Shown here one piece after another: positions 6,787 through 29,819 of a DNA stretch of 64,000 nt. The translations under genes were made by a program, and so were the position numbers. The DNA lies in NCBI RefSeq assembly GCF_963853765.1, contig NC_088854.1, forward strand, positions 48,980,001-49,044,000, given 5' to 3'. Under the pieces are notes generated by a model, which did no database searches, was not told where the DNA came from, and saw only the letters and a program-made list of their open reading frames with translations. Numbering within the stretch: the stretch's first letter is position 1; each line of letters starts with the position of its first letter. This stretch comes from Magallana gigas (lineage: Eukaryota).

Positions 6787-9700
6787 ATCAACCTGCCATA
6801 GAGAACAGACAATTACAAATAGTAAATGAGAGTGAAACAGTCATATTAACTCGAAATATTTCCGGCAACCCGGTGTCAAATGTATCCTGGTTTAATAAGA
6901 CGGAGCTGTTGAAAACCGAGACCTCAGTGACAACCACTTCTTTCTTCATAGAAAGAGCCACGTGTAGTGATACACAAAACTTTACTCTTGTGGCCAGTAA
7001 TGGAGTAGGAAGCAATGCGACAGCAGTGGTGGAGTTAATCGTTAACTGTAAGTTATCATCAACTAGTTTCAGCACTAGTTATTTTTTCAGCTAAATATTT
7101 CAAACTTTGTCAAATTTTTACATAAATCAAAACCAGGTCTAGACCGCATTGTCGTTTAGTTTCAATATACTATTTGTTGTTATTATACTTTCATGTTAAA
7201 CACTGAAATCTGATTGGTTTAGACGCAGTTGGTAATCCGTTCTATTACCCTCAGCGTAAGCAACACACTTGGCAACGGTAACACAACGAATTGTTACATG
7301 CGCGTAAATTATGCGCGTACAATTCGCCGTAGAATTCAGTTCATTTCTTCATAAAAGCAGTAAAATTTTCTTTAAAAATAAAACATTCAGTATGATAAAA
7401 TAAATAGAGCCTGTTAGGGAGGGAAACTGTTGAAATTGACACCCCTCGAAAACCATTGCCAACCTCCGCTTTGCGTCGGTTGACAATGGTTCTCTCGGGG
7501 TGTCAATTTCAACAGTTACCCTCCCAAACAGGCACTATTTATATAATGTACAGATCTTGAAAATTGCCCGTCATAGTAAATAATCATTATTTATTTTCTT
7601 ACGATAACGACGTAATTTAGTTCTAAATATAAGACTTTTTTTTATATAAACAAACATTCGATTTCGTGTCGCCTGGCTTCTACTTCGTCATTTTCTTTGT
7701 TGTTAAGTAAATATCAAATGTGTAAAATAAGCTAGACAGCATTCTTACATATAACAATAATTTAAACACAAGCAAATTATAAAAGTGATCACAATAAATC
7801 ATTTTTAAGTGAAGAGGTGAAATCCTAATTTACTGTTAATAGCTTGGAATCAAAGCACATTGTTTATATTCTATTCAATAATTTTTTTAAATATTGATTG
7901 AATTTGAAAGTTGTCATTGATTTTACCATTTTCATTCCCAATTATTAGTTGTACATGCATATTGTATATTACTTTGTACTGATGGTATCTCAAATACGTC
8001 GTTATCATATACTTCATATCTTAATATTGTCCCATAGAACGTTAGTATTAATATTGTTTATGTACCTTCGTAAAATATTAAAACGACTTTGTTTTGAAGT
8101 TTTATTTAATGTTTCTTTCATAGGCAAACCTATACCAGATAAGACAAATATTACACTAGGAGTTACTTTTACAACGGGAATTGAATTTTCAATTAAGATA
8201 ATTGCATATCCGGTGCCTCAATATGAATTAGTGTATGAAAACGGAACAAGGAACAATCAGATGCTGAATAATATCACACGAAATGCAGTGAATAATTTCA
8301 CTGTTTATTACAGACAAGTAGTTGTTGATCAAAGTAGTTTTGGTCTTTATTATCTAACAATGCGCAATCTTTTTGGAGAATCAACAGTTACCGTGAATGT
8401 GATCGAACAAAGTAAGTGACTAGATATTTCAAGTCTAAAAGAAAAACTTAAACAAAAAGCATGTATATCGAGTTCAAATTATTCTAGTTATCCTAACAAA
8501 AAGTGTCAGTTGTTATAAGTAAGATATTCTGGAATTACAAAACGACACGTATACTGATGTGGAACAAATTAAATGTCGTACTGTGGTATCATTAATATTC
8601 AAGGGTATCAATTTTCGTGGATGAAGTGAAAATCACAGTTTCAAGGATAGGTAAAATCGTGGCCAATGACCATATCAATACAAAATGTTAATTGAAATTG
8701 CACTTCGATGAACATTTAATTTCGTGGATCAATTAAACAACGAAATCCACGAAAATTGGTATTCAATGAATATTGATGAAACCACAGTATTTGACATATG
8801 GGAGGCAAAATAATTAAAACAAAATTCGTTAACTCTTTTTGCATGATAAAAATCAATTAATTCTTATTTAAGGAACAGGAAGACCAGAAACACCCAGAAG
8901 CATTGCAGTAGTATGTGAGATAACACAAGCCAGAATACAATGGATATCTTCTTTCAATGGCGGCGATCAACAGTACTTTACAGTTGTTATTTTGAATTTT
9001 CAAGATGGAACTAATATCTCTTATCGTTTTCACGACAAAGGTGAAAATGAACTTCATGCTGCACACATAAGCAATCTTCAACCATTGGTGACTTACTGGT
9101 TTGTTGTGTCTGCAAAGAACAGTTATGGATCTAGTCCGTCAGAAATCACCAGATGCAAGACAGTACAAGGTTATATTGAAGTAGTTGTGTAGATTAATTA
9201 TAGCTATCTGTTTTATCTTACATAAAGTATCTTATATAACACTTATTGCTTTTTCGTAGGTGAATACAATGATTTAGCTACCAAAGAAGTACGGTATTCA
9301 TCGAGCCCGAAAAGCGAATTGAGTTTTGCACTTCGATAGTAGCCGCATGTATATCATAGTTTTGATCGGAGGAATAATTTTGTTTTTTATTATATGATTC
9401 AGTAACAAACTAATACAGACAGAACATATTGAGCGGAACATACGAAAGCCGAGAAGGATCATTCGAGATTCGAGATTCGAAATACGAGATTCGAAATACG
9501 AGATTCGAGATTCGAAATTCGAGATTCAATATCTAAATTAACCAATCAAATCAAGGATCTAAAAATATGTATCCTAGCGACATCAAACTGTTCTAAATAA
9601 AAATCATACGTACATGCTCTTATATACAAATAAATGCTATGTTCACTTCTCCCTACCTAACTAAATAATTATTTGTATTTACTTTTACACAGAATATCTA

Positions 9701-11910: not shown

Positions 11911-11992
<82 letters not shown>

Positions 11993-12176
11993 ATGTAAAT
12001 CACAGGTGCGCTAACACCGTTAAAATTAAAGCTTGCTAGTTGGTCTGCCCTACCCTAGCTACCTCCTCTCTTTTCTCGTTTTAGAGGCTTAATTATTGTC
12101 TATATATGCTTGTAACAAATCAAATCAATTTCAAATTCTAAATCAAACTGAATTTGACACTACAAAACTCTCTCTG

Positions 12177-12262
<86 letters not shown>

Positions 12263-15200
12263 CGACAATGGCATTGCCATACCCTACAATACACTATTCT
12301 TATCTGGATTTTAGTCTTTGAGGTTGTAAATCATTATATCTTCTATGGTTTAAAACTTTATCTTAACCTATATTTTGACATGTCGATTATTTTTTTTGAG
12401 TTTTGTTTCATAGCTAAAACATTTAGATTAAACAGATCTTTTTTCGCGAGCCGATTTTTACACAGTTGGGGCGAATACACTTCGGGTTAAAATTGTTCGG
12501 GGGGGAATACATACAGGGCAAACAAAACCACTTAGATTCGCAAAGCCAACAGTGTTATTTCTAATTTAATTGTTTATACTGTGTGGGGTTAATTCATCAA
12601 TGTTAATTTAACCATTTTATAACCACTATATAAGAGCTATTAAGACATTTATTTGTAGGAAAGAGCATATACGAATGATCTTTATTTAGAACAGTTTGAT
12701 ATTGCTAGGATACAGGTTTCAGATCCATGATTTGATTGGTTAATTTAGATATTGAATCTCGAATTTCGAATCTCGAATCTCGTATTTCGAATCTCGTATT
12801 TCGAATCTCAAATCTCGAATGATCCTTCTCGGCTTTCGTAGGAACACGATGCAAAACGTACATTTTCTTTGGGTGACAGAATTGATAATAACCAATCGTA
12901 ACATATTGAAAATCCCCCGACATCATTTTAGTCCAATGTAGATAATAGGGATGTATTACTCACCTCAAAAGCAATGTGTTGAGTGAATTTTAAACAGTTA
13001 TTTATGTTTTTAGATCAATACGATTAGTACTCGAGAAAAAACATTATTGTAATTCGAGGGTAGATAAATCTTTCATCCACCCTCCCCCAGCAATAGTTGT
13101 TTAGTTTAATGGTTCAGAAACAAATTGAAAGAGACATATCAAAATCAGTGTTATATCACCCTGTAGTTCGTTAACGTCTGGTTTAAGTCACTGCCAAACA
13201 ATAAAAAACGTGAAGATTCATCGGATGACAGAAATGATAAAAACTAATCGTCGCAATGTAGGGAAAATCAAATGATATATTCACATCATACAAATAGGTA
13301 ACGTGCAGGTGAACATTTTCGAGCATGTTGGATTTCAGCCAATCAGAGAGCAAGGAATTAATCAAATAATAAAGCATTTTATTTTGTCTAGTATTCGATA
13401 TCATTAAATCAGAGAGCTGGGATTTATAAATCAAGCATATATATGTATTCATATTTGTAGATGTTCATCTCCTTTTTAAAAAGCTTTTCAAGGAATTCGG
13501 GCTTTTTAAAAAAGATAGTTTTTTGTCGCCTCAAATGTCATGAACGAAGATTACGTGTAAAAACATATATCTTAAACCGAAAAACATTATGATAAATAAG
13601 AGTTAAAGAAAAATGAATAACCTCTTTAAAAATTATCATTGGACATAACTGATTGCATTGAACTATTCACAAAAGTTAAAATTTTACGACTCATTTTATA
13701 AGAACAATGTATTTTTAGCGTTATTTTGTCTCTTCAGATATGTTAACTTGTCCGTAAAAAAATCCTTCTCTTAATATTGAATTAATGTGACAAAACTTTT
13801 TTCAGTAAAACCGTTTCATATAACTACACAAGTAAATTTAATGGAATCTTGATTTTCATCACAGAGAAAGCAAGCTCTAAAACAGGAATGGTTGTCGGAA
13901 GTGTTGGAGGGGCTCTGGTGTTGATCACAATTGTACTGATTCTTGGGATTGTTCACAGACGCTTCACATGTATCTGTAAAATAGGTAATCATTCAACAAC
14001 TCTTCAGGGTTTTTATGAGCAATTTTATGTCGCAAACAACAGTTTAAAGACTTGAATACGATTAAGAAATTCTACAAAATCTTCCAAAAGGTAGATTTTA
14101 CACCGTTTACATTGTCTTTGACTCAGTAAACGTTCAGATAATAAGTTTTAGAATGGCGTACAATTTTCTAAAATGCTTTTGTTGTTGTAAAGAATAGTTT
14201 GATTTGTGCAATACATGCTAGTCCAATATTTTTATGAATAATTCAACGGTGTCACTAATTGGATTGGATTTCTTTCATAAATGATTATTTTTTTCTTTCA
14301 TAAACATCTTGAAGTACAAGCATTTAAAAAAGTATAAATAAAAATAATTTTCATTGATATTTTTAGTAGAAATGCTTCTGAAATCAAAACAAATGTTTCT
14401 ATTGATTTTTTTTTAGCATTGGAGAACAAAGATAGGTAAGGTTTATCGTGTAAAATCAGTATTTAAACATTGGGATATAAAAGTATTTTTTTATTGTGGA
14501 AAAAAGCATATTAAATTTTGCTTGATTATTAATAAAAATTGCTGATAAATATAATCTGAATTTTATGAAATAAAATATGATACTTGAGCTTAAATACCTA
14601 GCTGAACATTTTTTGTGTTTCTATTGACATATAAACTTTCTGCTTGTTGGTCATTTGTTTGATGTCTTATTTTTCTTATAAGATTAAGAAAAAAAACTCG
14701 ATAAAGTTATATACAGTAAATTATATTAAAAAATCCTCTGGGTAATAAGTATACGTTCATAAACGCGCAATATGTATTTAACAACAATGAATCGTTTATT
14801 AAATATTTAATTCAGAAATACAACAGTTGCAGCAAACAAAGATAAATCTAACTATTCAACCATACAAGGTAAAGACAAGCTCTGAATGTACAATTTCAGG
14901 GGTTTTTTTCAATAAAACTTATGCTTCAAATGTCATGTAAGCTATAATTTTCTTATAAAAACAAGGAAATACAATATTAAAATTCATGATCATGAACTAA
15001 TATCTTTTTCCAAAACGCAAACACAAAATTAACTATAAATACTTTATAATACTTCTCAAGATAAATGCAGATATTGTCAATGTAAAATGCTCTATTTAAA
15101 CGATTCTTGAAAGTCCGTTTGTTTAATTTCAGAACAACAAGAACATTCAGAAAGGTGTGTTAATTTGTATATCTAATAGCTATATTGTAAGTTTTAAACT

Positions 15201-17449
15201 AAAATGCTTAATTTGTCAATGCATTGTTTTGACTAATGTTGGTTACGATTACTTTTAAAACTGACAAAAATTTTAAATATGCTTATTTTCCTATTGCTGT
15301 GCTGTATTCCGACAACCGCCATTTTAGTTTTTGATTTTTGTTGTTACGCTCTATACAAGTCATGCTTTACTTCATTCTTATTTCATTCCACACGCTACTG
15401 TGGAAAGAAAGATAAGTAGAAATGCGTTTAAAAACATGACAGCCACTTCGCTGGTAAGGAAGACTTAGTTCCAAGCACACATAGCCATATTGTCTTCATA
15501 TTTTTTAAATCCTTGTATATAGAGAAACATCTTTAAATACTTGTTTATAAAAATTATTTGCCAAAAAAGCTGTAACTTATGTGAAAGCATCCTTAAGTAA
15601 TGTAGATTCACAGTTGTCAAATTTATCTTCGGGGGTATGGGGCAAACGCGGGGATAAGGGTCAAGTTCTTACATAGGATTAAAAAATTATTCTCAAAATT
15701 TCAATTTTTATAATTCATGGTAGATGTATCACTTAGATGCAAACATCTTAACATATGTTTAATTCTCAATAACTGTAAACGAACTTTTATTTGCGACGAA
15801 TTTACTCCGCGATTAACCACCGAAAAACCGAATCACTACGTCTCATGTTTGCGACCAAACTTATTAAGATCAATGTTGTTATAAAATTATATACGACAAG
15901 GACCAGTTCACGGCGAGAAATATTCAAGGAAACGAGGTATTCGCTAAACGCGCAAAATTTTTTGCTTGCGAATAAAAGTTGGTTTACAGTAGTTAGAATG
16001 TGGCCCCTGGATATTTCTTTGGCCCCGCAAGAGGTGAGAGTTTGATGTAGGTTTAATTGTAAAAATAATGAATCGTTATCTCAGAGATTGCAAGAAAAAC
16101 AAGAACGCTTTTGTGAATTATTTATTGGCGATAATGGGCACGGCTGATAAATACATAAATCTTTAAAACTGCAATGTTCAATACATGATTTGACTTCATG
16201 AAAAGAACAATCCTACTGCAAAAGAGGCTCAATACATAAGAAAATTTGAAAAATTTGTTCATAGAGGATCTACTCTACTACTTTGTCGAGATATTTCGTA
16301 TATGACTCCACATAACTGTCTTTATTATCACTAGTGTTGCTTAGGTGAGGTGGCCCACGAGCCTCCTGGTTTCTATTGTGTTTTTCTCCCCCTTAACAAA
16401 CTATAGCATTGCAAAGTACAATGCATGTATTTAGAAATAATTACAACCCGAATGCCTCGATCGGGACGGAACCGACGGTTACTTTTTGTCCAGTATATAT
16501 ACCCCTGTAGCAGTAGAGGAGCGATCAAAAATTGAATAGCGACCAAATGCTTTTATGGGTTTATGTCAGCTTTATGTACATAGTTATGTTTTGATTATGC
16601 AAACACAAGCACTCTTACCTATTATAACAAATAAATATATTTAATTTATGTGATTTTCCCTTAATCAAAAAATAAGTTTTATATTATTTTTACACATTGG
16701 CTAAACTTAAGAAAAACGAACATATTTCATTTCCAACACGGTGTGCAAATTTACATTATTTTAAAGAGTTGTGCTGTTTAAAGAACTTTATTTGACCGTT
16801 TAAAATTTTTGAATTTTATTGTATACATTTAATAAAAACATAGAAAAATATTAATATGCATTTAGCATTTAAATATATGATTTTCTTGTACAAATCAATA
16901 TAATAAGTTCATAAAAGTGTTTTCCCGAGAATAAACAGCAAGTGAAATTAATTTCACAAAAGCATATACAGGATTTTTTTTTTTACAATATTTATTAATT
17001 TAATGATCAATGAATTTTTTTTATGGATGTAAATTGTAGGAACATGTATGACGCGTTAACATCAACTGAAAATGCAAACCAATACGAAGATATTTTGAAG
17101 AAAGGTACGGCAGACTAAGAACTAATGTACAGTTTATTTCGATAATTTGAATTAAATCAAATTTTTCATTTCTCTTTCATTTTATGATATAACTGTTCAA
17201 TTGTCTATACGAAAGCTTTTTTTCTTCTAAAAAATGTAATTATACAATGTAATTCAAGAACCTAAATCATTTTTTTAAAGTGAAAGCTTTCGGTTGATAG
17301 CAATTTCTACTTGTTTTAAATGAAAATTTTCAAGAATAACTTTATTAGAATCCATGATCATTTCATTTAAACTTCTGATAAAGATTTGTATTTGCATATT
17401 ATCAATTGATATGATTATTTTCATTACAGATAATAATGGATATGATGAG

Positions 17450-17497
<48 letters not shown>

Positions 17498-20400
17498 ACT
17501 GTCTCTTTTTCTATCATTCTCTATCTTTTCATCTCTATTTCAGTCATCACAAAGTTATAAGGTATCCGATCCATAATAGCCTCAGATTCAATGAATCTGG
17601 GTGCATAACAGATATGTATGGGCTTAACACTCAGTATACTTGAACATAATGTTCCTATTTAAGTATCAATATGTAAGTGTGGAATGTGTCCTAATTAATG
17701 TCCTTTTCCTTTTTTTGAAGAGTTGTCCCCCTTTGCTTTTATTCTATAAAAATTTATTCTAAAAAATCTACACGGTATTAAATTTATTTTCAATAGTTTT
17801 TGTATTTCTATTGATAAAATACAGCTTTCCACCAAAGCATTTTTTAATACTCCTAGTAATTACTTTTTTATCTTAAAAAATGTGCTTGTCTCCATAGACC
17901 TTAATGCTATCTTTATTAATTAATTACTGCTTAGTTAATAATATTTTTGAAAATTTCTCTCGGTAAATCTTTTTTCTACTCTTAAATGCTTTAAATGAAT
18001 ATCAAAGTATTAAATCCATGATGAATATTTAAGGTTGGAAAAATTTGGTCCTAATATGGATCGGGTACCTTATAATTATCAATCTGTTTGTAGAAAGTTG
18101 TATGAAAAACTGCAAAGCAGTGCTGATAAAGACAATGAAGCAAGTTCCTCTAAACGGAGGATACCATTGAAAATTAAAGGTAAATGCACTTCTAGATTTT
18201 ACCGAACAATTGAATTATCAATTTCAGTTGAAATACTGTCTAAAAAACTTAATATCATGTTAAAAAAGGACAAAGTGAGAAGACATGTCAGAAAAATTCC
18301 ACACAATTTTTGTAGCGGTATTGATATAGTGTTCAATAGTAAAGTGATATAATAATGATTAATTTAAGAAAATCGAAGAAATCGAGCAGTAAAAGTAATT
18401 ATGATAAAAGAAAAACCCAGAACAATAACAGTAAACAAGTGCTTTAATGACTGACTGAATTCTTAAAAAGTATGTAAAGGTTGTTACACGGCTTAACAAG
18501 GACGCGAGGGACCTAGGCAACCGTGTAACAACCATTTTGTCGCATGGTCTTTCTTTCTAGATTGAATGATGAAACTTATTAGGGTTTGATCGGTAAGGAC
18601 TAAATAGATAAACAGTCAACAGTGTTCTGAGATATATTCACTCTGATTAAATCTTAAAGCGGTACACAAAATGGCAGAGGAAAAGTTTTGTTTTATGGAC
18701 ATACAAGAAATAGGAGTGTGATAAAAAATACAACTCTAAAAATCCATCCAATGTAAAAGGTTATCGTATAACTGATGATTTAGTGATTGGTTCAATGATT
18801 AATCACTTAACACTTTTCGTTCATCAGTGATATACCATGGGCAATCAAATTAAAATTTGTGGTCGTTAGAGTGTAACCATGCAACAAATTCGCTTCTCTT
18901 ATCACTGTTTTTCTACATGTATATCTTGTTTTATCGTAAATTACCGATTTTACTTGTACAATATTGTATTTGACTATTCAACATTAAATTGAAATACTTG
19001 TATAAAAAGATGTTAACTATACTACTATGGAGAGAACATTAACAAAATAAGATCTATAAAACATTTTGAAGTTATGCCCAAGCTGACATGAAAATATCTG
19101 ATCACTTATTGATATTCATAGTTTTATTTTTTTCGGTTTTTATCCTATTGCTGGTTTTTTTTATGTCTGACTTATCCAAGATACCTGATGAATAAACTAA
19201 GAGAGATTGATTAGGACTAAATACTTTATTATGGTTTGGCGTTACTGGCCGCAGTGACTTTAGGCTACCAATGGGCTGCCTCACAACAATTCAAACAATA
19301 CAACAATACGTGACGGCCCATCAATAGGCTCATTGCGCAGTGGGTGAGCACAAATGCACAAACGTCACAAAATATAATATTCTGTACAGTGGGTAAGTGC
19401 AAATGCACAGACATACAAATGACAAAGTTATACACAAGGTTTGTGCGAATGGGTAAACGCAAATGCACAAGTTTCAAAGTTCAAAACACATTAAAATTGT
19501 CAAAGTTCTTGTGCAGCAAGTATGTGCGCGAATGCACAAGCATGAATACACAGCATTTTAAACACATTAACAGCATTATAAACACATTATATTGACAGTA
19601 AAAAACTGTATCCTTTGATAATTTGAATGATTGCACTCTTCCATTGGAGTTGGGGTGCGACGATAGCCCATAAATCAACGACAATGTCAGGAATAGAACG
19701 AGTGTCACTGCGACGATTTTTTGTTCAGAACTGCAGGTATCACAAAGATTACGTGGGTGTCACACCGGAACTGAAGGTATCACAAAGGTTATGATGGTTG
19801 ACCTGAAAAAAATAATGTAAAGAAAAGCAGTATGTGGTTCTAAGGAAAGGAAATGGGAGAGGAAGGGAGGGTAAATTAATCTAAAGAGTATACTTTATTA
19901 CGGAGAATTAAAACATGTCTTACCAGTTTCAAGAAGAATCCAGAAATGATGCAAAAGGAGGCCTAATTTTAAAGCGAGTATATTCAACCGGAAAAATTCC
20001 GGAAAAACATAAACACTATTTATAGGTCCTTGGATAAATTTGCATATCTTTGACAAGCCAAGATATGCCGTATTATCCAAGATACCTGATGAATAAACTA
20101 AGAGAGATTGATTAGGACTAAATACTTTATTATGGTTTGGCGTTACTGGCCGCAGTGACTTTAGGCTACCAATGGGCTGCCTCACAACAATTCAAACAAT
20201 ACAACAATACGTGACGGCCCATCAATAGGCTCATTGCGCAGTGGGTGAGCACAAATGCACAAACGTCACAAAATATAATATTCTGTACAGTGGGTAAGTG
20301 CAAATGCACAGACATACAAATGACAAAGTTATACACAAGGTTTGTGCGAATGGGTAAACGCAAATGCACAAGTTTCAAAGTTCAAAACACATTAAAATTG

Positions 20401-23400
20401 TCAAAGTTCTTGTGCAGCAAGTATGTGCGCGAATGCACAAGCATGAATACACAGCATTTTAAACACATTAACAGCATTATAAACACATTATATTGACAGT
20501 AAAAAACTGTATCCTATGATAATTTGAATGATTGCACTCTTCCATTGGAGTTGGGGTGCGACGATAGCGCCACTTGCAAGGGTCATGAACGTTTGTTTAT
20601 GACACTGCAACCGCCACCAATGGAGTGCGCCACTTTCCAAAAGTAACATTGGTGACGGCGGCAGGACCGCAACTCCAATGGTCACCACGAGCCAGTAGTA
20701 GTTAATTGTGATGTGGTTAGTCCGGAAGGCCAACACCGCCACAATTTAATAAATCTTGCAACGCACCTTGAATGGTATTTAAAAGGATATCATTACCCAG
20801 CTGGGACAGGTGAACTCCATCAGGGTCAAACAACGTAGGTGGTTTTGGGGAAAACTGAGGGTATTTGATGTAATGACCGCCCCTCGATGTTACAAATTTT
20901 ATCGCTTCTCTATTCATTCGACCCCTTATTTCATTCATTGCTTTAACATTGTCTGAAAAGCGCCAAGCTAATCTAGGCAGGGCAGAGGACCAAACTATCG
21001 TTGTGGTAGGGAACATGTCACAAATTCGGGACAAGGTTGTGAAAAGGAGCTCCAGCAGCTCTTCAGTGGTTTTCTGGCCAACATTGTTTGCTCCGCAATG
21101 AATGACGAGAAACTCAGGACGATCTTCTAACCTTAGCAACGTTGATAGCCTAGTATTAAGGTCTTGTAGCTTCATGCCACTATATCCCTGCCATAAGACT
21201 GAAGTATTCTCGAGATTAAGATTAAGCCCCCCCCTGTCTTGATACTGCACTCATAGCTGCTCGTTTGATGATAGAAGATCCGACAATCCAAACTCTGACA
21301 GGACCTAGAATTATCTTGTTTATGGTTAGTAAGATAGATACTGTTGGAATGATAAGGTTACCGAATGTATGTACGAAATGCATTAGAGCGCCATCGTCCT
21401 GACCCTTGGATGACGTCACTGTGAACGCCTTGAATAGCAAGGGTTGTAGCTGCACCTATTCTAAATGAATGGGAATTATAATTGGAGCTATCAACCCCTA
21501 TTGCATTAAGACAACGCTTCAATATGGTGATAAATTGATAACGGGTCAATGGTTGACCTTCAAAATGAATAAACAATGGGCCAGTTTGAGATGTGCGCAT
21601 GTGTAAGTAGGCATGCATGGCGGCAAAAGGACAAGCAACACCATTTGAAGCAGGAATCTGCAAGTTTGCCCCCACACCTAATTGGTCTGTTTTTGAATGA
21701 CAAATTGTCAATTGAATGTTGGTCTGCTGCATTGTTATGTCATGAAATTGGATGATAGTTGCTGGTGTGTTGCCTTTAGACACTGTGAATTCCCCTATGC
21801 GCAAGAGGGCGTGAAATGCTAAAGTGAAAGCTGCAGTGAATAGTTTGGTTTCGTATATGGTGTTGCATACGGTTTGCAATGTTGGTATAATTTTGTTTAA
21901 GAGCTGTAATGTAATAGGCAAACGAGTGTCCTTGTGTAGTGTTGTTCTTTGCATGCCCTGAAGTAGCTTTCTTATAATAAAATGATTAGTAGGATCTACA
22001 TTGTAAATTGCTTTGCTGTAAAAACTGATGGCTGCAATGTATGACTGAGCTGTGGAGTATTTGTAACCTGAAAGTGACAGGTAAGCGATAAACCTTGTAA
22101 TGTGAGTGTCGAGAGGTGGCCACAGACTGGGTAGGTTATGAGACCGGCGAAATGTTTCAAATGAATTGATGCCTGCTGTGTGTGTTTGCCTAGTGTTTAC
22201 AGCAACTGAAGCGTTGAACAATGATTGGATGTGACTTGTGAGAGTAATGTCTGGAATAGGGCTGGAATGGCCTGCGGATGAAGGTCTGCATAAGGTGCTG
22301 CTGCTCGAAAGACTTCCCACTGTTTGCGAGATATAGAATCAGCAATAATGTTTGATTTTCCCGGAATATGTTGTGCTTTAAATTGTATGTTGTGTTTTAA
22401 AGCCATTAAGACTAACGATCTGACAAGTACCATTACTCTTGGGGACTTGGCTGACTGTTTGTTGAGAATATGTACAAGGGAAATATTATCTACATGGAGG
22501 ATGACTTTTTTGTTTTGCAAACGCAATCCCCATATCATGAAGGCTAATACAATAGGTACTAATTCGAGAAAAGTTATGTCCCGCAAAATTGGCTTGTTTA
22601 ACCATGAAGATGGCCAGGTAAAATGAACCCACTGACCCTGAAAGAAACTGCCGCAACCAAGGTGGCCAGAACCTGCACTATCCGTGTAAAGTTGCAAAGT
22701 ATCTAGTGTAACCCATTCAGTGTCTGGGAAGTATACAACGCCGTTAAAGTTGTCTAAAAATTGTAGCCATGTGAACATGTCTTCACGGATAGGGTTCGTA
22801 ATTCTGATGTGATGATAGGGAGAGGGCACCCCGGACATAACATTGTAAAATCTCCTATTGAATGCACGGCTACCTGGGATGGCTTTACTAACGAAATTGA
22901 GCTTGCCCACTAAAGATTCTAACTGGGAAAGAAGAATTTTTTTCTGTGTGACCCAATGCTGCAACAAAAGTTTAAGTTCTTGAACCTTACTAACGGGAAT
23001 TTGGACCAGCATATTCACAGTGTCGATTTCTAAACCAAGAAATGTAAGCTTAGTGGTTGGCTCAATAGTTTTGTCTTGGTTCAGGGGGACCCCTATTTCT
23101 GAACAAATGTCCTGAAAAGTGTGCATGAGAGCTGAACAATTGTCTGAATTGGACTTGCCAATAAAAATAAAGTCATCCAAGTAGTGGTGAACTGTATCGA
23201 GTTGTGTTTTAAATTTGACAGCCCATTCTAAGAAAGTGGAAAAAGTTTCAAATATTTTGCATGATATTGAACACCCAAAGGGGAGGCATTTGTCGATGTA
23301 ATAAGCCCCATTAATGTAAATTCCTAGAAGTTCAAAGTCCCCTGGGTAAATTGGCAGAAGACGAAAAGCATTTTTAATGTCCACCTTAGCTAATAGAGCC

Positions 23401-25857
23401 ATAGGACCTAGTGTGCTTATGGTTTGGACCACTGTGTCAAAAGATGTATAGGTAACTGTAGTGAACTGTGGGTCTATGTGTTCATTAATACTGAAAGAGG
23501 GTGGGTAGGATAAGTGTGTTATCATACGCCATCCACCGTCAGCTTTGGGTACAACACCTATGGGAGATACATGTAAATTAGGCATGGGTGGGAGTAAGTA
23601 TGGGCCAGACATTCGACCTGCCGTAACTTCACTATATATTTTTTCCAAGAGAACCTCCTCGCTGTCGGAAGCTGAACTCAAGTTTTTTGAGAAAACTGAA
23701 ATGCGTGGTCCAGAGTATTGCAATTTAAAGCCATGTTTTAGACCATCCTCTAAATACCTTGCCGAGACCCTATCTGGGTATTGACTCAAATAATTGCTAA
23801 TTGCGCTAATGATTATGGGAGAATACCCTAGGACCCAAATGTCTCTGGGGTTGACGAGGGTTTCCTGCCCAATGTTGGTTGGTGCGTGTTTGGTGTGCTG
23901 GTGTCTGATACCTGAATGTGGCATAAGAGTTGTTGCGGACTGGAGTGGATGCCCGAAAGGAATTATTTGCATGACCCGGGGGTGGGTTAGCACTGTTGCA
24001 CAACATAGATGGATGGGTGCCATTGCATTTAAGGCATCGGTGTATGTACGGACAATGGGGCTTGTAACAGTTTGCTTTGAGATTGTAATCAAAGCACTTG
24101 TGGTGTTGGGTACTAGAAGATTTATTTGAATTGGCAGTCATGTATAATAACCAAAGCTCATTATCTATGATTCCCCAGTTCTGTGACGGGTTGTGTGCGA
24201 TCCTTAGCCTAAATTGTTCATCGTACGAAACCCACCCATTAGAATTCTGTGCCCCTAAGCGAACGTCGTGCATATATTTAATAAGCTGTTGCGATCTAAG
24301 TGGGTGCACTGCAGTGTAAATGCTGAAATAAATGAGAAATGCATCTGTCCATTTTTCGATAGATGTTATTCTGGTTGTGGGTTTTGGTTGTGATATGATG
24401 TTACCCTGCGCATCAATTGTGAGAGTAGATGTTGCATGGGCATTAGTGGGGTCCCTTACCAATAATGTTCCCAGATTGACAAATTCGCCCTTGATGATTT
24501 TTTGCTTAATTGGTTGGTTTACATGATACCCAATGGGAACTGTAATAGAGTTGATTGGTTCGGGAGTAGGCTGATGGGTTGAGGTGATAATGGAAGTTAT
24601 CCCTGTATCTGTACATGAAGATGTGAGACTAGAATTGACAGGCGAAATGAGGCCGGGCATTAGAGTGGTGGATTGTTGTAATGTTGCTACAGGGGGGTTA
24701 AAAATCTCATTACCCGCCTGATCCTGGGCTTGCTGTGGTGGGGCTGCCTGTTGTAACAGTGCCGCCTGATGCTGTGGGGCTGCCTGGGGTAGTTGGACTG
24801 CCTGGGGCTGAGGGGGTGCCAGTTGAGCCTGGACATCTTGTTCGTTATTGTTGGTCTGTTGGCGTTGAGCCCTGCGCCGGCCTGGCCTGCGTGCTTGTCC
24901 TGGGTCTTGAGTATCACGGGCAGCCGCCCGTTTAAGTTGTCTCTTCGGCCTTGGCATTGACCCCGTTGATCTCGTGGTATTTTAAAACAAAAGCGAAAAT
25001 TGTTACCTAATTAATTTGTAAATAAATCAATGTTAATCAATTTCATAAAATTCTATTGGTATATTGGTAGCTAAGCCGAAAAAAGCAGTAAATTTAAGAT
25101 CAAGCTAAAATAATGTGCGCCATTGAAGATTGCACTCGAGAGATTGTTGCATCTAAATCCATACAATCAAAGGACCTCAGTGGCCATCGAGCGGAAATCG
25201 GTGGCAGATATGCCTTTTCTCGACTTAATAAAATTGATAAAAGTATTTGAACGACTAAATTAATCTAAAGAGTATACTTTATTACGGAGAATTAAAACAT
25301 GTCTTACCAGTTTCAAGAAGAATCCAGAAATGATGCAAAAGGAGGCCTAATTTTAAAGCGAGTATATTCAACCGGAAAAATTCCGGAAAAACATAAACAC
25401 TATTTATAGGTCCTTGGATAAATTTGCATATCTTTGACAAGCCAAGATATGCCGTATTATTTGCAAGAAACTTACGGCATTTGCCTGGGTGCTTGATATC
25501 TAACAACATATTTTTTCTGGGGCAAAGTCATCGTGCTGAATAAAGACCACATTTATCATTATCAGGATAATCTATCCTAAAAACCTATGGAGTTAGATTC
25601 AATGATATTTAAGCTAGATAACGGTTTGTTAGTACTAAAGATAAATTCAGTCGTATTGGTTTCCTTGACTATTGTAAGGCATGTTAATGGCATGTTGATA
25701 CTGTACTGTAATAAATGTCGCTTAAATTGTTGCACCCATCGCTTTTTCAGTTTTTATCAATCTTTTTATTTGAAATATCTTTTTTATAGATTTAAAGGAT
25801 GACAAATTCGTTACTCAGAATACTGAGGAATATGCAAACACATCATTTATGGAGTAA
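6787..25857 (+). CDS. Ig/FnIII single-pass receptor, copy 1, 3' portion (nephrin/hemicentin-like IgSF; 5' exons outside the window)
   Basis: Exons: 6787-7047 (Ig), 8124-8411 (Ig-like), 8879-9169 (FnIII; alternative acceptor 8873), 13865-13984 (TM GMVVGSVGGALVLITIVLILGIV then HRRFTCIC), 14417-14435, 14816-14868, 15133-15154, 17040-17104, 17430-17448, 18094-18179, 25790-25857 (TAA). All GT-AG and phase-consistent with no stops. Nearly every exon has a same-sized or near-same-sized counterpart in copy 2. Confidence 0.85.
7170..7547. mobile_element. Short non-autonomous element with a large terminal hairpin (Crypton-like, family uncertain)
   Basis: Hairpin 7400-7542 with ~65-bp imperfect arms (ATAAATAG..CCAACC / GGTTGAC..CTATTTAT) and a CTGATTGG motif near the 5' end. 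The family assignment is from memory of bivalve repeats only. Confidence 0.5.
8581..8787. mobile_element. MITE with TA TSD (Tc1/mariner-type)
   Basis: TIR CTGTGGTATCATTAATATTCA vs TGAATATTGATGAAACCACAG. TA at 8579-8580 and 8788-8789. Confidence 0.8.
9871..10007. repeat. Short interspersed repeat ending GATCCCCGCATG (same family as 28493-28674)
   Basis: Shares the TTTTACTATGTAAA core and a GATC..GCATG end with the 28.5-kb copy. Confidence 0.45.
11915..11989 (+). repeat. (GA)n microsatellite
   Basis: Read directly. Confidence 0.97.
12168..12258 (+). repeat. Compound (CTGT)n(CT)n microsatellite
   Basis: Read directly. Confidence 0.97.
15465..16372 (+). mobile_element. Degenerate Helentron/HINE-type non-autonomous element with a satellite-like monomer
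   Basis: The 3' end TGTTGCTTAGGTGAGGTGGCCCACGAGCCTCCTGGTTT and the internal GAAAGCATCCTTAAGTAATGTAGATTC..CAAGTTCTTACATAGG resemble oyster HINE/Cg170-type repeats as recalled, not searched. 5' boundary is approximate. Confidence 0.55.
15773..15989. mobile_element. MITE nested in the HINE-like element
   Basis: TIR CTGTAAACGAACTTTTATTTGCG vs GCGAATAAAAGTTGGTTTACAG. TA on the right, AA on the left. Confidence 0.75.
17449..17497 (+). repeat. (TATC)n microsatellite directly after a 19-nt microexon donor
   Basis: Read directly; a degenerate counterpart lies at 53441-53515 in copy 2. Confidence 0.95.
20717..21383 (-). CDS. Ngaro ORF4, SGNH/GDSL hydrolase; split by a +1 shift in a G8 run (21227-21234)
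   Basis: Block I VWIVGSS is in the 21222-21455 frame. Blocks II WQGYSG, III HCGANN and V DGVH are in the 20717-21250 frame. G7 instead of G8 would join them as SRQGGLNLNL. Confidence 0.85.
21358..22320 (-). CDS. Ngaro ORF3, tyrosine recombinase (320 aa)
   Basis: Complete catalytic set: LLRIGE (R), SKTDQ (K), HSFR (H-x-x-R), GRW (W), TYIR (Y). Confidence 0.95.
   Translation of the reverse strand: MGSLSSSSTLCRPSSAGHSSPIPDITLTSHIQSLFNASVAVNTRQTHTAGINSFETFRRSHNLPSLWPPLDTHITRFIAYLSLSGYKYSTAQSYIAAISFYSKAIYNVDPTNHFIIRKLLQGMQRTTLHKDTRLPITLQLLNKIIPTLQTVCNTIYETKLFTAAFTLAFHALLRIGEFTVSKGNTPATIIQFHDITMQQTNIQLTICHSKTDQLGVGANLQIPASNGVACPFAAMHAYLHMRTSQTGPLFIHFEGQPLTRYQFITILKRCLNAIGVDSSNYNSHSFRIGAATTLAIQGVHSDVIQGSGRWRSNAFRTYIR
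22197..24092 (-). CDS. Ngaro ORF2, reverse transcriptase-RNase H
   Basis: RT motifs KVDIKNAFR, LPFGC and HYLDD. RNase H motifs YTDS, FLEL, HVDN and IADSISR. Overlaps ORF1 and ORF3 in other frames. Confidence 0.95.
   Translation of the reverse strand: MITISKQTVTSPIVRTYTDALNAMAPIHLCCATVLTHPRVMQIIPFGHPLQSATTLMPHSGIRHQHTKHAPTNIGQETLVNPRDIWVLGYSPIIISAISNYLSQYPDRVSARYLEDGLKHGFKLQYSGPRISVFSKNLSSASDSEEVLLEKIYSEVTAGRMSGPYLLPPMPNLHVSPIGVVPKADGGWRMITHLSYPPSFSINEHIDPQFTTVTYTSFDTVVQTISTLGPMALLAKVDIKNAFRLLPIYPGDFELLGIYINGAYYIDKCLPFGCSISCKIFETFSTFLEWAVKFKTQLDTVHHYLDDFIFIGKSNSDNCSALMHTFQDICSEIGVPLNQDKTIEPTTKLTFLGLEIDTVNMLVQIPVSKVQELKLLLQHWVTQKKILLSQLESLVGKLNFVSKAIPGSRAFNRRFYNVMSGVPSPYHHIRITNPIREDMFTWLQFLDNFNGVVYFPDTEWVTLDTLQLYTDSAGSGHLGCGSFFQGQWVHFTWPSSWLNKPILRDITFLELVPIVLAFMIWGLRLQNKKVILHVDNISLVHILNKQSAKSPRVMVLVRSLVLMALKHNIQFKAQHIPGKSNIIADSISRKQWEVFRAAAPYADLHPQAIPALFQTLLSQVTSNHCSTLQLL
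23806..24957 (-). CDS. Ngaro ORF1, gag-like (383 aa)
   Basis: Basic and Gln/Pro/Ala-rich N-terminus, W..YDEQFR motif, Cys/His knuckle CFDYNLKANC..PHCPYIHRCLKCNGTH. First ORF after repeat A1. Confidence 0.85.
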   Translation of the reverse strand: MPRPKRQLKRAAARDTQDPGQARRPGRRRAQRQQTNNNEQDVQAQLAPPQPQAVQLPQAAPQHQAALLQQAAPPQQAQDQAGNEIFNPPVATLQQSTTLMPGLISPVNSSLTSSCTDTGITSIITSTHQPTPEPINSITVPIGYHVNQPIKQKIIKGEFVNLGTLLVRDPTNAHATSTLTIDAQGNIISQPKPTTRITSIEKWTDAFLIYFSIYTAVHPLRSQQLIKYMHDVRLGAQNSNGWVSYDEQFRLRIAHNPSQNWGIIDNELWLLYMTANSNKSSSTQHHKCFDYNLKANCYKPHCPYIHRCLKCNGTHPSMLCNSANPPPGHANNSFRASTPVRNNSYATFRYQTPAHQTRTNQHWAGNPRQPQRHLGPRVFSHNH

Positions 25858-27365: not shown

Positions 27366-27500
27366 NNNNNNNNNNNNNNNNNNNNNNNNNNNNNNNNNNN
27401 NNNNNNNNNNNNNNNNNNNNNNNNNNNNNNNNNNNNNNNNNNNNNNNNNNNNNNNNNNNNNNNNNNNNNNNNNNNNNNNNNNNNNNNNNNNNNNNNNNNN
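27366..27500. other. Assembly gap (135 N)
   Basis: Run of N. Confidence 1.
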
Positions 27501-28674: not shown

Positions 28675-29729
28675 TCCAAAATAAGTTTCATAAGTGTAGA
28701 TTTAGGCAAACGCATGTTTTTAAATAAAGAAGGTTGAAGCTTTCTTTCCCCTTTCCTTGTGCAACGCTACTACACATGTATTATAAAGCGTGCACTATTT
28801 ATTTAAAAAGAGTCATATAATATATTGTACGCGTGTGCGAAGTACAGTGATATGGGTGTTATTGTAATAACTGGAGATTTTAATAGTCGTGTTGTTGAAT
28901 CAAAAGATTATGTTGAATATGATATTTTGTCAAACGATTTGTTAAATAACATGCCTGCATTTTTGTCATATGATAAGGATTATATTTGTTCACTTAAATC
29001 GAAAGGAAAACATGTCAATAATTTTGGTCGTAGATTACTCGAACTATGTCGAGCCTCTGGTCTTAGAATATGTAATGGCAGGGTTTCTGGAGATACTCGG
29101 GGCAAATATACATTTTTTAATCATATATGTTCGAGTGCCGTAGATTATGTTTTAATTAGTAAAGACAATTTTGATGCCATCGAGAGTGTTACTGTGAAAG
29201 ATTTAAATGAATGGTCAGACCACGCTCCAGTTGAATTGTGTATTCATAATGTTAAAAGCTATCAACGATATAACAATAAAAACATTTTCTGTAGTAATGT
29301 AAGTACGGCTGGCAGTGTATTTAGATGGAATGAGGAAGCTGTTTAGTCAATGAGATGTATTTTATACTGTAAGGTGTCTTTTTGAGAAAATGGACTGTGG
29401 GATCCTTAGTTTAGATCAGGTTGTGAATAATTTCACTAGTATATTAAACAGTGCTTTTATGCCTTTTTGGGAGTTGATTTTAATAAATTCTCCTATGCAG
29501 TTACTCAGACAAACCGAAAGTAAACAGTGTTTGGACCTCAGCACAAATCATTCCTGCTGACAAGACTTAGTTCTTGAAAATAATTGATAAACTCGATGTA
29601 ATGTATGCTACAGCATTGTTTTTCAAGGAAACTTATCTATAAATACCTTGAAAATAGTCAGATTTTAAATGGTACGAACAATTTAAATATTTTTTGTAGT
29701 CGTATGTATTCCTACGCCAGAGTTCAATA

Positions 29730-29819
29730 AAGTCTCGTTTAACTCGACGCTCGGCTTTCTCCGTAAATCCTTGTCGGAGATATACGGTGTATAGCCGAGC
29801 GTTTGGTTGAACGAGACTA
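29730..29819. mobile_element. ~90-bp hairpin mini-element within the insertion that interrupts the LINE
   Basis: Imperfect ~26-bp arms AGTCTCGTTTAACTCGACGCTCGGCT / AGCCGAGCGTTTGGTTGAACGAGACT. Confidence 0.65.

What the first reader, a model, noticed from the sequence alone, without database searches (positions are those of the whole stretch)
13865..25857. Invertebrate IgSF receptor tail combining ITIM-like, ITAM-like and YxN motifs
The spliced tail of copy 1 reads HRRFTCICKIALENKDRNTTVAANKDKSNYSTIQEQQEHSERNMYDALTSTENANQYEDILKKDNNGYDEKLYEKLQSSADKDNEASSSKRRIPLKIKDLKDDKFVTQNTEEYANTSFME. It contains SNYSTI (ITIM consensus S/I/V/L-x-Y-x-x-I/L/V), YDAL-x8-YEDI (ITAM consensus YxxL/I-x6-8-YxxL/I), LYEKL and YAN (GRB2-type YxN). 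These motifs recur in the diverged copy 2 (SNYTTI, YDDL-x8-YEDI, LYEKL, YVN) while the flanks drift, which suggests selection. None of this shows in the ORF track because the exons are 19-86 nt. Inference: a tandem family of immune-type receptors with both activating and inhibitory motifs in a bivalve.
Basis: partly seen in the sequence, partly recalled or inferred. Interest (0 to 1): 0.78.

Follow-up and report, generated by a model that had tools for sequence, protein, structure and literature searches.

The report
Oyster Ig receptor's tyrosine-motif tail
The microexon-encoded tail is real, expressed and already in the public Pacific oyster gene models, and its five tyrosine motifs are conserved across an oyster-only family of clustered immunoglobulin-type membrane receptors. 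This makes it a new member of a kind of receptor already described in oysters, and its immune role is unproven.

Summary
Spliced RNA contigs from three studies show every junction from exon 1 to exon 7. The whole tail, exon 8 included, is identical to RefSeq XP_065933048.1 of Magallana gigas, which is automatically named "neural cell adhesion molecule 1 isoform X2".

The gene belongs to an oyster-restricted family with at least 13 paralogs within about 2.2 Mb of one chromosome. The protein has an N-terminal domain without a Pfam match, three Ig domains, a family-specific domain, an FN3-like domain, a transmembrane segment and the tail.

Across 20 non-redundant tails, five of the six tyrosines of copy 1 are among the 15 best-conserved of 120 positions (p about 9e-5). 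The motifs are S-x-Y-T-T-[I/M/L], Y-D-x-L, then 6 or 8 residues, Y-E-x-[I/V/L], Y-E-x-L, and a C-terminal E-Y-x-N-T-S-F.

It is probably a young pseudogene.

Oyster IgSF receptors with ITAM or ITIM tails are already published (CgIgR, CgIgIT, CgNCAM1), but they are other loci. Immune function, SH2 binding and the sign of signalling remain untested. The scan holds a note on another ITAM/ITIM receptor cluster elsewhere in this genome.

The parts
6787..7047 (+). Copy 1: last canonical Ig (I-set) exon, 261 nt, phase 1-1
   Evidence: Pfam I-set E=7e-10. AG/GT borders and residues 317-407 of P0082.
8124..8411 (+). Copy 1: family-specific domain 'b' exon (no Pfam match), 288 nt
   Evidence: 100% match to P0082 residues 407-501. 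Only 57 hits in 1.84 billion representative proteins, and the named full-length ones are from oysters. No Pfam family.
8873..9169 (+). Copy 1: FN3-like exon, 297 nt. An alternative acceptor 6 nt downstream gives the older NCBI model.
   Evidence: fn3 E=6e-4, below the Pfam cut-off. 100% match to P0082 residues 503-600. P0082 reads RTGRP where P0090 reads RRP.
13865..13984 (+). Copy 1: transmembrane exon, 120 nt, ending in the juxtamembrane HRRFTCICKI
   Evidence: The spliced contigs begin here.
14417..14435 (+). Copy 1 tail exon 2, 19 nt
   Evidence: Junctions 13984>14417 and 14435>14816 in runs X5 and X6. Appears as 'letters between' in X4.
14816..14868 (+). Copy 1 tail exon 3, 53 nt; carries SNYSTI (ITIM-like)
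   Evidence: Tyr conserved at weighted identity 0.82 across 20 tails.
15133..15154 (+). Copy 1 tail exon 4, 22 nt
   Evidence: Junctions 14868>15133 and 15154>17040.
17040..17104 (+). Copy 1 tail exon 5, 65 nt; carries MYDAL-x8-YEDI (ITAM-like twin tyrosine)
   Evidence: Y45 and L48 are invariant and Y57 is at 0.90.
17430..17448 (+). Copy 1 tail exon 6, 19 nt; its Tyr is not conserved
   Evidence: The 19 letters sit exactly between 17104 and 18094 in X5 and X6 contigs (table 5c). Y68 is at 0.03.
18094..18179 (+). Copy 1 tail exon 7, 86 nt; carries LYEKL
   Evidence: Y73 is at 0.94.
25790..25857 (+). Copy 1 last coding exon, 65 nt plus TAA; carries EEYANTSF (YxN)
   Evidence: Identical to the C-terminus of P0082 and P0090. 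Y113 0.94, N115 0.94, F118 1.0. The junction from exon 7 was not covered by reads.
19172..25460 (-). Ngaro-type retrotransposon inside the last intron of copy 1. It is not part of the gene, but it explains the 7.6-kb gap before the last exon.
   Evidence: RVT_1, Phage_integrase and GDSL hydrolase ORFs on the minus strand. Absent from the matching intron of the paralog at C2:48.694 Mb.
37358..49187 (+). Copy 2 ectodomain exons. Ig exons lie near 40608-41000, 43540-43854, 44590-44988, 45099-45494 and 46546-46887. Domain b (48381-48671) has an in-frame TAG at 48489-48491. The FN3 exon has a 7-nt deletion near 49075.
   Evidence: Pfam Ig hits; stop codon and frameshift.
49712..56431 (+). Copy 2 transmembrane and tail exons: 49712-49834, (50228-50249, uncertain), 51481-51533, 51819-51840, 52426-52490, 53422-53440, 53567-53652, 56364-56431
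   Evidence: blastn and splice-aware reconstruction; the chain is open and ends in a stop. No RNA evidence was obtained for copy 2.

Best explanation
Positions 6787-25857 are the 3' part of an expressed Magallana gigas gene (product XP_065933048.1, 750 aa). It encodes a type I membrane protein: signal peptide, an N-terminal domain of about 110 aa without a Pfam match, three Ig domains, a family-specific domain, an FN3-like domain, one transmembrane helix and a 120-aa polar tail. The tail is split over seven short exons.

The gene is one of at least 13 paralogs of an oyster-restricted family clustered on one chromosome.

The tail most likely works as a phosphotyrosine docking scaffold. After the ectodomain is engaged and clustered, a Src-type kinase would phosphorylate up to five conserved tyrosines, and SH2 proteins would then bind. 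The proposed partners are:
- Grb2/Drk at the C-terminal E-Y-x-N-T-S-F. This is the cleanest motif.
- A tandem-SH2 kinase of the Syk type, or Src-family SH2 domains, at Y-D-x-L-(x6 or x8)-Y-E-x-[I/V/L] and at Y-E-x-L.
- An SHP- or SHIP-type phosphatase (or p85, in relatives with Met at +3) at S-x-Y-T-T-[I/M/L].

Shown here: gene structure, splicing, family membership and motif conservation. Inferred: phosphorylation, the binding partners, the tissue and the net effect on the cell.
For: - Exons and reading frame.
- Spliced contigs in three RNA runs from three studies show every junction from exon 1 to exon 7.
- The tail is identical to P0082 (XP_065933048.1) and to XP_011442936.1.
- Pfam Ig hits on the ectodomain.
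- 13 close paralogs lie at C2:48.43-50.62 Mb.
- The same eight-exon chain is open in 10 paralogs.
- Domain b is found only in oyster proteins: 57 hits in 1.84 billion.
- Five of six tyrosines fall among the 15 most conserved of 120 tail positions in 20 non-redundant tails, p = 9e-5. Y45, L48 and F118 are invariant and N115 is at 94%.
- The twin-tyrosine spacing is 6 or 8 residues in the 18 of 20 tails that keep both tyrosines.
- A distant same-genome paralog (P0103, 55% identical in domain b) keeps SHYTTL, YEIL, YEAC, YESL and YINLSF.
- All three motif types together occur by chance in 0.14% of shuffles.
- CgSyk and CgSHIP2 exist in the oyster and bind other tyrosine-motif IgSF receptors (PMC6994640, PMC11841013).
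Against: - No phosphorylation or binding data exist for this protein.
- The tail as a whole is only moderately constrained (dN/dS 0.35-0.7).
- Motif 1 has Met at +3 in many C. virginica members, and its Tyr is replaced by His or Cys in three tails.
- The second ITAM tyrosine has Val, Phe or Cys at +3 in 7 of 20 tails, and the motif is missing in 2.
- One paralog (C2:48.427 Mb, P0081) has lost two of the five motifs.
- A poly-A RNA run sampled at 1% showed no exon reads, so expression may be low or tissue-restricted.
- The tissue of the runs that do hold the transcript is unknown.
Confidence: 0.6

Rival explanations
1. The chemistry is the same, but the biology is the reader's. The family is a set of haemocyte immune receptors that combine an inhibitory ITIM (SHP/SHIP recruitment) and an activating ITAM (Syk recruitment) in one tail. 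They would work like vertebrate CD22 or FCRL proteins and tune antimicrobial responses.
For: - The consensus sequences are met in copy 1.
- The family is lineage-specific, tandemly expanded, and has pseudogenes and gene conversion, as immune receptor clusters typically do.
- A second tail type in the same family and chromosome region ends in LLYVEV and TDYATVEF, a classical ITIM/ITSM pair.
- Other oyster IgSF receptors with an ITAM or ITIMs have published immune roles (PMC6994640, PMC11841013; J Immunol 2020 205:2402, as cited in PMC11999971).
Against: - No expression, challenge or binding data were obtained for this gene.
- The characterised receptors are other loci: C2:52.44 Mb and C1:74.35 Mb.
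- The motifs are degenerate in many members.
- No activating partners with a short tail and a charged transmembrane residue were seen. The transmembrane segments of the reconstructed paralogs carry no charged residue.
Confidence: 0.3
2. It is a cell-adhesion or morphogenesis receptor of the nephrin / Kirre / NCAM functional type, expressed in epithelia or neurons. Its tyrosines would recruit Src-family kinases (Y-E-x-I), Nck-like adaptors (Y-D-x-L) and Grb2 (Y-x-N) to couple adhesion to the actin cytoskeleton. It would have no immune role.
For: - The Ig-plus-FN3 ectodomain is typical of adhesion molecules.
- Automatic names of paralogs are nephrin, syg-2, Kirrel and NCAM1.
- Asp at +1 of Y45 (83%) and Glu at +1 of Y57 and Y73 (82-84%) are conserved. 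From general knowledge of SH2 specificity, these resemble Nck-type pYDxV and Src-type pYEEI preferences more than they are required by ITAM or ITIM definitions.
Against: - The family has no ortholog outside oysters. The best non-oyster hits have E-values of 1e-15 to 1e-6.
- It is rapidly duplicating, which is unusual for core adhesion molecules.
- The automatic names are inconsistent with one another.
Confidence: 0.25
3. The conserved YxxL/I sites are tyrosine-based sorting signals (YxxPhi) read by the AP-2 mu2 subunit. They would drive endocytosis or recycling of the receptor without phosphorylation.
For: YSTI, YDAL, YEDI and YEKL all fit YxxPhi. Position +3 is hydrophobic in nearly all 20 tails.
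Against: - The best-conserved motif, E-Y-x-N-T-S-F, has Thr at +3, so it is not a YxxPhi site. It is instead defined by Asn at +2, the Grb2 determinant.
- The fixed 6 or 8 residue spacing of the twin tyrosines and the conserved acidic +1 residues are not needed for AP-2 binding (established knowledge).
Confidence: 0.12
4. The motifs are chance matches of short degenerate patterns in a Tyr-containing polar tail.
For: A single ITIM (14%) or YxN (47%) is common in shuffled tails.
Against: - All three together occur in 0.14% of shuffles.
- Position-specific conservation across 20 diverged tails gives p = 9e-5.
- Motif versus flank identity between copies 1 and 2 gives p = 4e-4.
Confidence: 0.03

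Closest known systems
CgIgR (Crassostrea gigas 'BCR-like' IgSF receptor; Sun et al., iScience 2020, PMC6994640)
   Same: Same species. It is a type I receptor with several Ig domains, and its tail has a twin-tyrosine ITAM whose second half is YEKL. It was reported to dimerise, bind bacteria and recruit CgSyk to activate ERK.
   Different: It is a different gene on another chromosome; its ITAM coding sequence maps to C1:74.35 Mb. It is described with five Ig domains and no FN3 domain, ITIM-like site or C-terminal YxN. It was not among the family members retrieved here.
CgNCAM1 (XP_034303240.1; Cell Commun Signal 2025, PMC11841013)
   Same: Same species and same chromosome. It has an Ig + FN3 + TM architecture and carries the same automatic RefSeq name type (NCAM1). 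Its tail has two ITIMs and was reported to bind CgSHIP2 and dampen IL-17 and TNF expression in haemocytes.
   Different: It is a different locus, 3.4 Mb away; the reverse cloning primer maps to C2:52,436,275. It is 617 aa, and the primer implies a C-terminus of EEDERL rather than NTSFME. No ITAM-like or YxN motif is described for it.
CgIgIT / CgIgIT2 (J Immunol 2020 205:2402; Dev Comp Immunol 2023 144:104708; known here only through citations in PMC11999971)
   Same: They are oyster IgSF transmembrane receptors described as immune inhibitory receptors.
   Different: Their sequences and loci could not be checked, because the papers are not in the searchable library. Identity with this family is therefore neither shown nor excluded.
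Vertebrate CD22 (Siglec-2) and FCRL receptors (from general knowledge, not tested here)
   Same: They are multi-Ig type I receptors whose tails combine ITIMs, an ITAM-like pair and a Grb2-binding YxN site. Their tails are split over several short exons. Some paralogs of this family are automatically named 'B-cell receptor CD22-like'.
   Different: There is no orthology. The best vertebrate hit is a skate 'CD22-like' protein at E = 1e-13 over a third of the query. A sialic-acid-binding V-set domain was not examined. The FN3-like domain and domain b are absent from CD22.
Hydractinia Alr family (bioRxiv 10.1101/2022.03.04.482883, also PMC9546547)
   Same: It is an invertebrate, lineage-specific, clustered family of single-pass proteins with unusual Ig domains plus an FN3-like fold. 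Some of its tails carry ITAMs or ITIMs.
   Different: It is a cnidarian allorecognition complex. In Alr, ITAM and ITIM sit on different proteins and the tails are too diverse to align. Here one alignable tail type carries all the motifs. No allorecognition role is known in oysters.
Drosophila Draper (from general knowledge, not tested here)
   Same: It is an invertebrate receptor whose tail ITAM recruits the Syk-like kinase Shark. An alternatively spliced isoform converts the tail to an ITIM-like inhibitory form.
   Different: Its ectodomain is EGF-repeat, not IgSF. No alternative tail isoforms were seen here, either in the RNA contigs or in the public isoform models.

Membership tests
Immunoglobulin superfamily type I receptor | Ig-fold ectodomain(s), a single transmembrane helix and a cytoplasmic tail | tested here: met
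   Pfam Ig_3, I-set and Ig_2 above cut-off on P0082 and on window exons. A 23-residue hydrophobic segment is followed by HRR.
ITIM-bearing receptor | [S/I/V/L]-x-Y-x-x-[I/V/L] in the tail | tested here: met
   SNYSTI in copy 1. Across 20 tails, position -2 is Ser in 15, Tyr is present in 17, and +3 is I/L/V in 15, Met in 4 and Thr in 1.
ITIM-bearing receptor | The phosphorylated motif binds SHP-1/2 or SHIP and inhibits signalling | not testable with these tools
   Needs phosphopeptide binding and cell assays.
ITAM-bearing receptor | YxxL/I-x6-8-YxxL/I | tested here: met
   YDAL-x8-YEDI in copy 1. The first half, YxxL, is invariant. Spacing is 6 or 8 in 18 of 20 tails. The second +3 is I/L in 11, Val in 5, Phe or Cys in 2, and the motif is absent in 2.
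ITAM-bearing receptor | The doubly phosphorylated motif recruits the tandem SH2 domains of Syk/ZAP-70/Shark | not testable with these tools
   CgSyk exists and binds another oyster receptor (PMC6994640). Nothing is known for this tail.
Grb2/Drk docking site | pY-x-N | tested here: met
   EEYANTSF at the C-terminus. Tyr 94%, Asn 94%, Phe 100% across 20 tails. Binding was not tested.
NCAM1 (the RefSeq name of the gene) | Orthology to NCAM: five Ig plus two FN3 domains, found across bilaterians | tested here: not met
   The architecture is one unassigned N-terminal domain, three Ig, domain b and one weak FN3. Domain b is found only in oysters. Paralogs carry a dozen different automatic names.
Nephrin / IRM family (name of paralog P0103) | Orthology to nephrin/Sns: eight or nine Ig domains plus FN3, and YDxV Nck sites | tested here: not met
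   The only nephrin hit is at E = 6e-6 with 21% identity. There are fewer Ig domains. The tail has Y-D-x-L, not Y-D-x-V.
Paired activating/inhibitory receptor cluster (KIR/LILR type) | Activating members with short tails and a charged transmembrane residue that couples to an ITAM adaptor | tested here: not met
   All 10 reconstructed paralogs have the long tail and an uncharged transmembrane segment. Two long tail types exist instead. More distant members were not searched exhaustively.

The most novel reading that the evidence does not exclude
The C2:48.4-50.6 Mb region would be an oyster counterpart of a leukocyte-receptor-type or allorecognition-type complex. It would be a fast-evolving cluster of IgSF receptors with two conserved tail programmes: type A (ITIM-like + ITAM-like + Grb2 site) and type B (multi-tyrosine, ending in an ITIM/ITSM pair).

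In this reading the type A tail is built from frame-neutral exon pairs (19+53, 22+65 and 19+86 nt). These pairs can be lost, shortened or duplicated to retune signalling between paralogs and species. Examples seen are the loss of YEDI in P0081 and the duplicated twin-tyrosine block in two C. virginica proteins.
Probability: 0.15. Interest if true: 0.65.

Novelty: new member of a known kind. Interest (0 to 1): 0.36.

Why it matters
Oysters lack antibodies but have hundreds of IgSF genes. Only a handful of these have been tied to Syk, SHP or SHIP signalling.

This report defines a whole uncharacterised, oyster-only receptor family that is misnamed NCAM1, nephrin, hemicentin, CD22 and so on in databases. 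It gives the family a precise five-tyrosine tail signature that is conserved between Magallana and Crassostrea.

That gives experimenters concrete peptides and Tyr-to-Phe targets. It also gives a cleaner test of whether a single invertebrate tail can carry both activating and inhibitory docking sites.

The gain is incremental. The gene is already annotated, and the concept is already published for other oyster receptors.

Tried and rejected
- **Same gene as CgNCAM1?** No. The published reverse primer maps 3.4 Mb away, and the forward primer is absent from the window.
- **Same gene as CgIgR?** No. Its ITAM coding sequence maps to another chromosome and is absent from the retrieved family.
- **Chance motifs:** rejected.
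- **Alternative tail isoforms that switch motifs:** none were seen in the RNA contigs or in the RefSeq isoforms of this gene and two paralogs. The only differences were a 6-nt alternative acceptor and skipping of the transmembrane exon in a paralog.
- **Public gene calls around the gene:** The look-up of encoding contigs for P0082 returned nothing, because records of the window's own genome are withheld.
- **Literature by accession number:** nothing found. A search for a description of this family as an expansion with ITIMs also found nothing specific.
- **Poly-A raw-read run X21:** only 1% was sampled and there were no exon reads. This is uninformative.
- **Exon 2 of copy 2:** no convincing homolog of the 19-nt exon was found. 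The 22-nt candidate at 50228-50249 only satisfies frame and splice rules.
- **Complex prediction:** no job was sent, on my judgement that the proposed contacts depend on phosphotyrosine and would not be captured.
Full report
**Observation**

The window comes from chromosome-scale contig C2 (48,980,001-49,044,000) of a 564-Mb genome. That contig's length, 61,469,542 bases, is the contig length recorded for RefSeq proteins of Magallana (Crassostrea) gigas.

Each sits in a short open stretch bounded by AG and GT. The exons are 13865-13984 (120 nt, the transmembrane segment), 14417-14435 (19), 14816-14868 (53), 15133-15154 (22), 17040-17104 (65), 17430-17448 (19), 18094-18179 (86) and 25790-25857 (65 nt plus TAA). 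Joined, they translate into exactly the peptide quoted in the finding.

**RNA evidence**

Oyster RNA runs hold the region. I laid four runs on 13700-18400. Spliced contigs in X5 (2,792 nt, word depth 118), X6 and X4 come from three different studies. They show joints 13984>14417, 14435>14816, 14868>15133 and 15154>17040. They also show 17104>18094 with the exact 19 letters of exon 6 lying between. All of these joints except X4's have GT..AG ends. X4's single joint, 13984>14814, is listed as GT..TC and carries a variant of exon 2 as 'letters between'.

The microexon chain is therefore used as predicted for exons 1 to 7. Junction 7-8 lies outside the stretch laid. It rests on the public protein models.

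A poly-A run sampled at about 1% showed no exon reads, which says little.

**What the gene is**

Window exons 6787-7047 (I-set Ig), 8124-8411 (called domain b here; no Pfam match), 8873-9169 (weak FN3) and the tail chain reproduce residues 317-750 of P0082 at 100% identity. The first 316 residues lie upstream of the window.

Pfam finds three Ig domains in P0082. It finds nothing for the N-terminal ~140 residues, for domain b or for the tail. All ectodomain exons and the transmembrane exon are multiples of three in length and phase 1-1.

The 7.6-kb gap before the last exon is explained by a Ngaro-type retrotransposon on the minus strand, with reverse transcriptase, tyrosine recombinase and GDSL hydrolase ORFs. 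This element is missing from the matching intron of a paralog.

**The family**

- Domain b finds 13 close copies on the same contig between 48.43 and 50.62 Mb, and four distant ones at 58.0 Mb.
- Against 1.84 billion representative proteins it finds only 57 hits.
- A search with one full-length member returns almost only Crassostrea, Magallana, Saccostrea and Ostrea proteins. The best non-oyster hits have E-values of 1e-15 or weaker.
- The automatic names in that list contradict each other: hemicentin, titin, CD22, syg-2, NCAM1, nephrin, Kirrel, CEACAM, contactin and Dscam. None of them should be read as orthology.
- I fetched 20 kb downstream of each paralog. In all ten paralogs of the 48.43-49.08 Mb block, the same eight-exon chain could be rebuilt as an open frame with conserved exon sizes.

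**Are the motifs more than chance?**

- In shuffles of the copy-1 tail, an ITIM pattern appears in 14%, an ITAM in 0.8%, YxN in 47% and all three in 0.14%.
- I aligned 20 tails that are less than 85% identical to each other, from M. gigas paralogs, C. virginica and C. angulata proteins. Fifteen of the 120 positions of copy 1 reach a weighted identity of 0.8 or more. Five of its six tyrosines are among them (hypergeometric p = 9e-5).
- The other conserved positions are motif partners: T32, R42, D46, L48 (invariant), E58, E74, N115, S117 and F118 (invariant). The juxtamembrane Arg is also conserved.
- The family signature is S-x-Y-T-T-[I/M/L]; R-N-x-Y-D-x-L, then 6 or 8 residues, Y-E-x-[I/V/L]; Y-E-x-L; and E-Y-x-N-T-S-F near the C-terminus.
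- The tyrosine in the 19-nt exon 6 is not conserved.
- A distant paralog in the same genome (P0103, 55% identical in domain b) keeps all five sites.
- Overall the tail evolves about as fast as the membrane-proximal ectodomain (dN/dS 0.35-0.7 against 0.32-0.44). The constraint is therefore concentrated on the motifs.

**Copy 2**

The tails are 62% identical, with motif residues at 89% against 54% for the rest (p = 4e-4).

However, copy 2 has an in-frame TAG at 48489-48491 where copy 1 has TAT. It also has a 7-nt deletion near 49075 in the FN3 exon. A twin copy at C2:48.73 Mb shares the TAG and is 99.3% identical over 15.7 kb, introns included. This twin is either a very recent segmental duplication or an uncollapsed haplotype.

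Exons are 75-87% identical between copies 1 and 2, while introns do not align. Selection therefore acted for most of their history, and the damage is recent. On its own, copy 2 is weak evidence. The wider family carries the argument.

**How it probably works**

What is shown is an expressed type I IgSF protein whose disordered polar tail keeps five tyrosine sites. The rest is inference from established SH2 specificities:

- Asn at +2 defines Grb2 binding.
- Paired YxxL/I sites 6-8 residues apart define Syk-family tandem SH2 binding.
- [S/I/V/L]-x-Y-x-x-[I/V/L] defines SHP and SHIP binding.

The conserved acidic +1 residues also resemble Src-type (pYEEI) and Nck-type (pYDxV) preferences. Relatives with Met at +3 of the first site fit the p85 YxxM motif.

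Oyster Syk and SHIP2 exist and bind other tyrosine-motif IgSF receptors (PMC6994640, PMC11841013).

I therefore favour a phosphotyrosine docking scaffold (0.6). Whether the outcome is activating, inhibitory or both, and whether the setting is immunity or adhesion, is open. A purely endocytic YxxPhi role is less likely. The best-conserved site, Y-x-N-T, has Thr at +3 and is not a YxxPhi signal, and the twin-tyrosine spacing is fixed.

**Comparison with what is known**

Oyster IgSF receptors with an ITAM (CgIgR) or ITIMs (CgNCAM1, CgIgIT, CgIgIT2) are published. The two I could check are different loci:

- The CgNCAM1 reverse primer maps to C2:52,436,275, and its forward primer is absent from the window.
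- The CgIgR ITAM coding sequence maps to C1:74,351,082.

CgIgIT and CgIgIT2 could not be checked.

The same family also has a second tail type of about 205 residues. It carries YxxV sites, two YxN sites and a terminal LLYVEV plus TDYATVEF pair. A gene of that type lies at C2:49.59 Mb.

No members with short tails and charged transmembrane residues were seen, so this is not a classical paired-receptor cluster.

**Verdict**

This is a new, uncharacterised member, or rather a family, of a known kind of invertebrate receptor. It is already present in public gene models under misleading names. The useful new content is the family definition and the conserved five-site tail signature. The immune and dual-signalling claims remain hypotheses.

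Noticed in passing
window 19172-25460 (- strand): Ngaro-type retrotransposon in the last intron of copy 1, with ORFs for reverse transcriptase (22200-24137), tyrosine recombinase (21361-22338) and a GDSL hydrolase (20720-21250). It is flanked by repeated segments at 19314-19592 and 20215-20493. It is absent from the matching intron of the paralog at C2:48.694 Mb, so the insertion is young.
   Followed up: partly
window 2033-4547 (+): hAT-type transposase remnant: a zinc finger of the C17orf113 type, DUF4371 and the hAT dimerisation domain. It lies in the intron upstream of the 6787 Ig exon of copy 1.
   Followed up: partly
window 48489-48491 and about 49075; G000:C2:48729786: Copy 2 has an in-frame TAG and a 7-nt deletion in two ectodomain exons. 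A twin 300 kb away is 99.3% identical over 15.7 kb and shares the TAG. This is either a recent segmental duplication or an uncollapsed haplotype in the assembly. The pair at C2:48.516 and 48.644 Mb is 98.6% identical in the same way.
   Followed up: partly
L028/L029 (G000:C2:48694000-48713999) versus window 17430-25857: The paralog at 48.694 Mb has tail exons 6-8 that are 97-98% identical to copy 1, while its exons 1 and 3 are only 78-79% identical (exon 4: 86%). This suggests gene conversion or unequal crossing-over within the tail.
   Followed up: partly
window 17468-18095: An intronic stretch with very high word depth (400-860) in all RNA runs and many variant letters. It is a transcribed high-copy repeat just upstream of tail exon 7. 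A (TATC)n microsatellite starts directly after the donor of the 19-nt exon 6 (about 17449-17508).
   Followed up: no
window 8873 / 8879: Two acceptors 6 nt apart at the FN3 exon give RTGRP (XP_065933048.1) or RRP (XP_011442936.1).
   Followed up: partly
P0111, P0120 (Crassostrea virginica); P0081 (M. gigas, C2:48.427 Mb): Tail modules vary between members. Two C. virginica proteins carry a duplicated twin-tyrosine plus YEKL block. P0081 lacks the YEDI half and has His in place of the first motif's Tyr. The exon pairs 19+53, 22+65 and 19+86 nt each sum to a multiple of three.
   Followed up: partly
P0145 and P0066 (M. gigas paralogs): Public isoform models skip the transmembrane exon, joining the ectodomain directly to the tail. 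This would give a soluble form.
   Followed up: no
window 28807-32228 (+) and 58136-61551 (-): Degraded ORFs lie between the two copies; from their sequence they look like a non-LTR retrotransposon (endonuclease/reverse transcriptase type). Beyond copy 2 there are further degraded ORFs that may be a second tyrosine-recombinase element. The three ORFs scanned had no Pfam hit at E <= 0.001. An assembly gap lies at 27366-27500.
   Followed up: no
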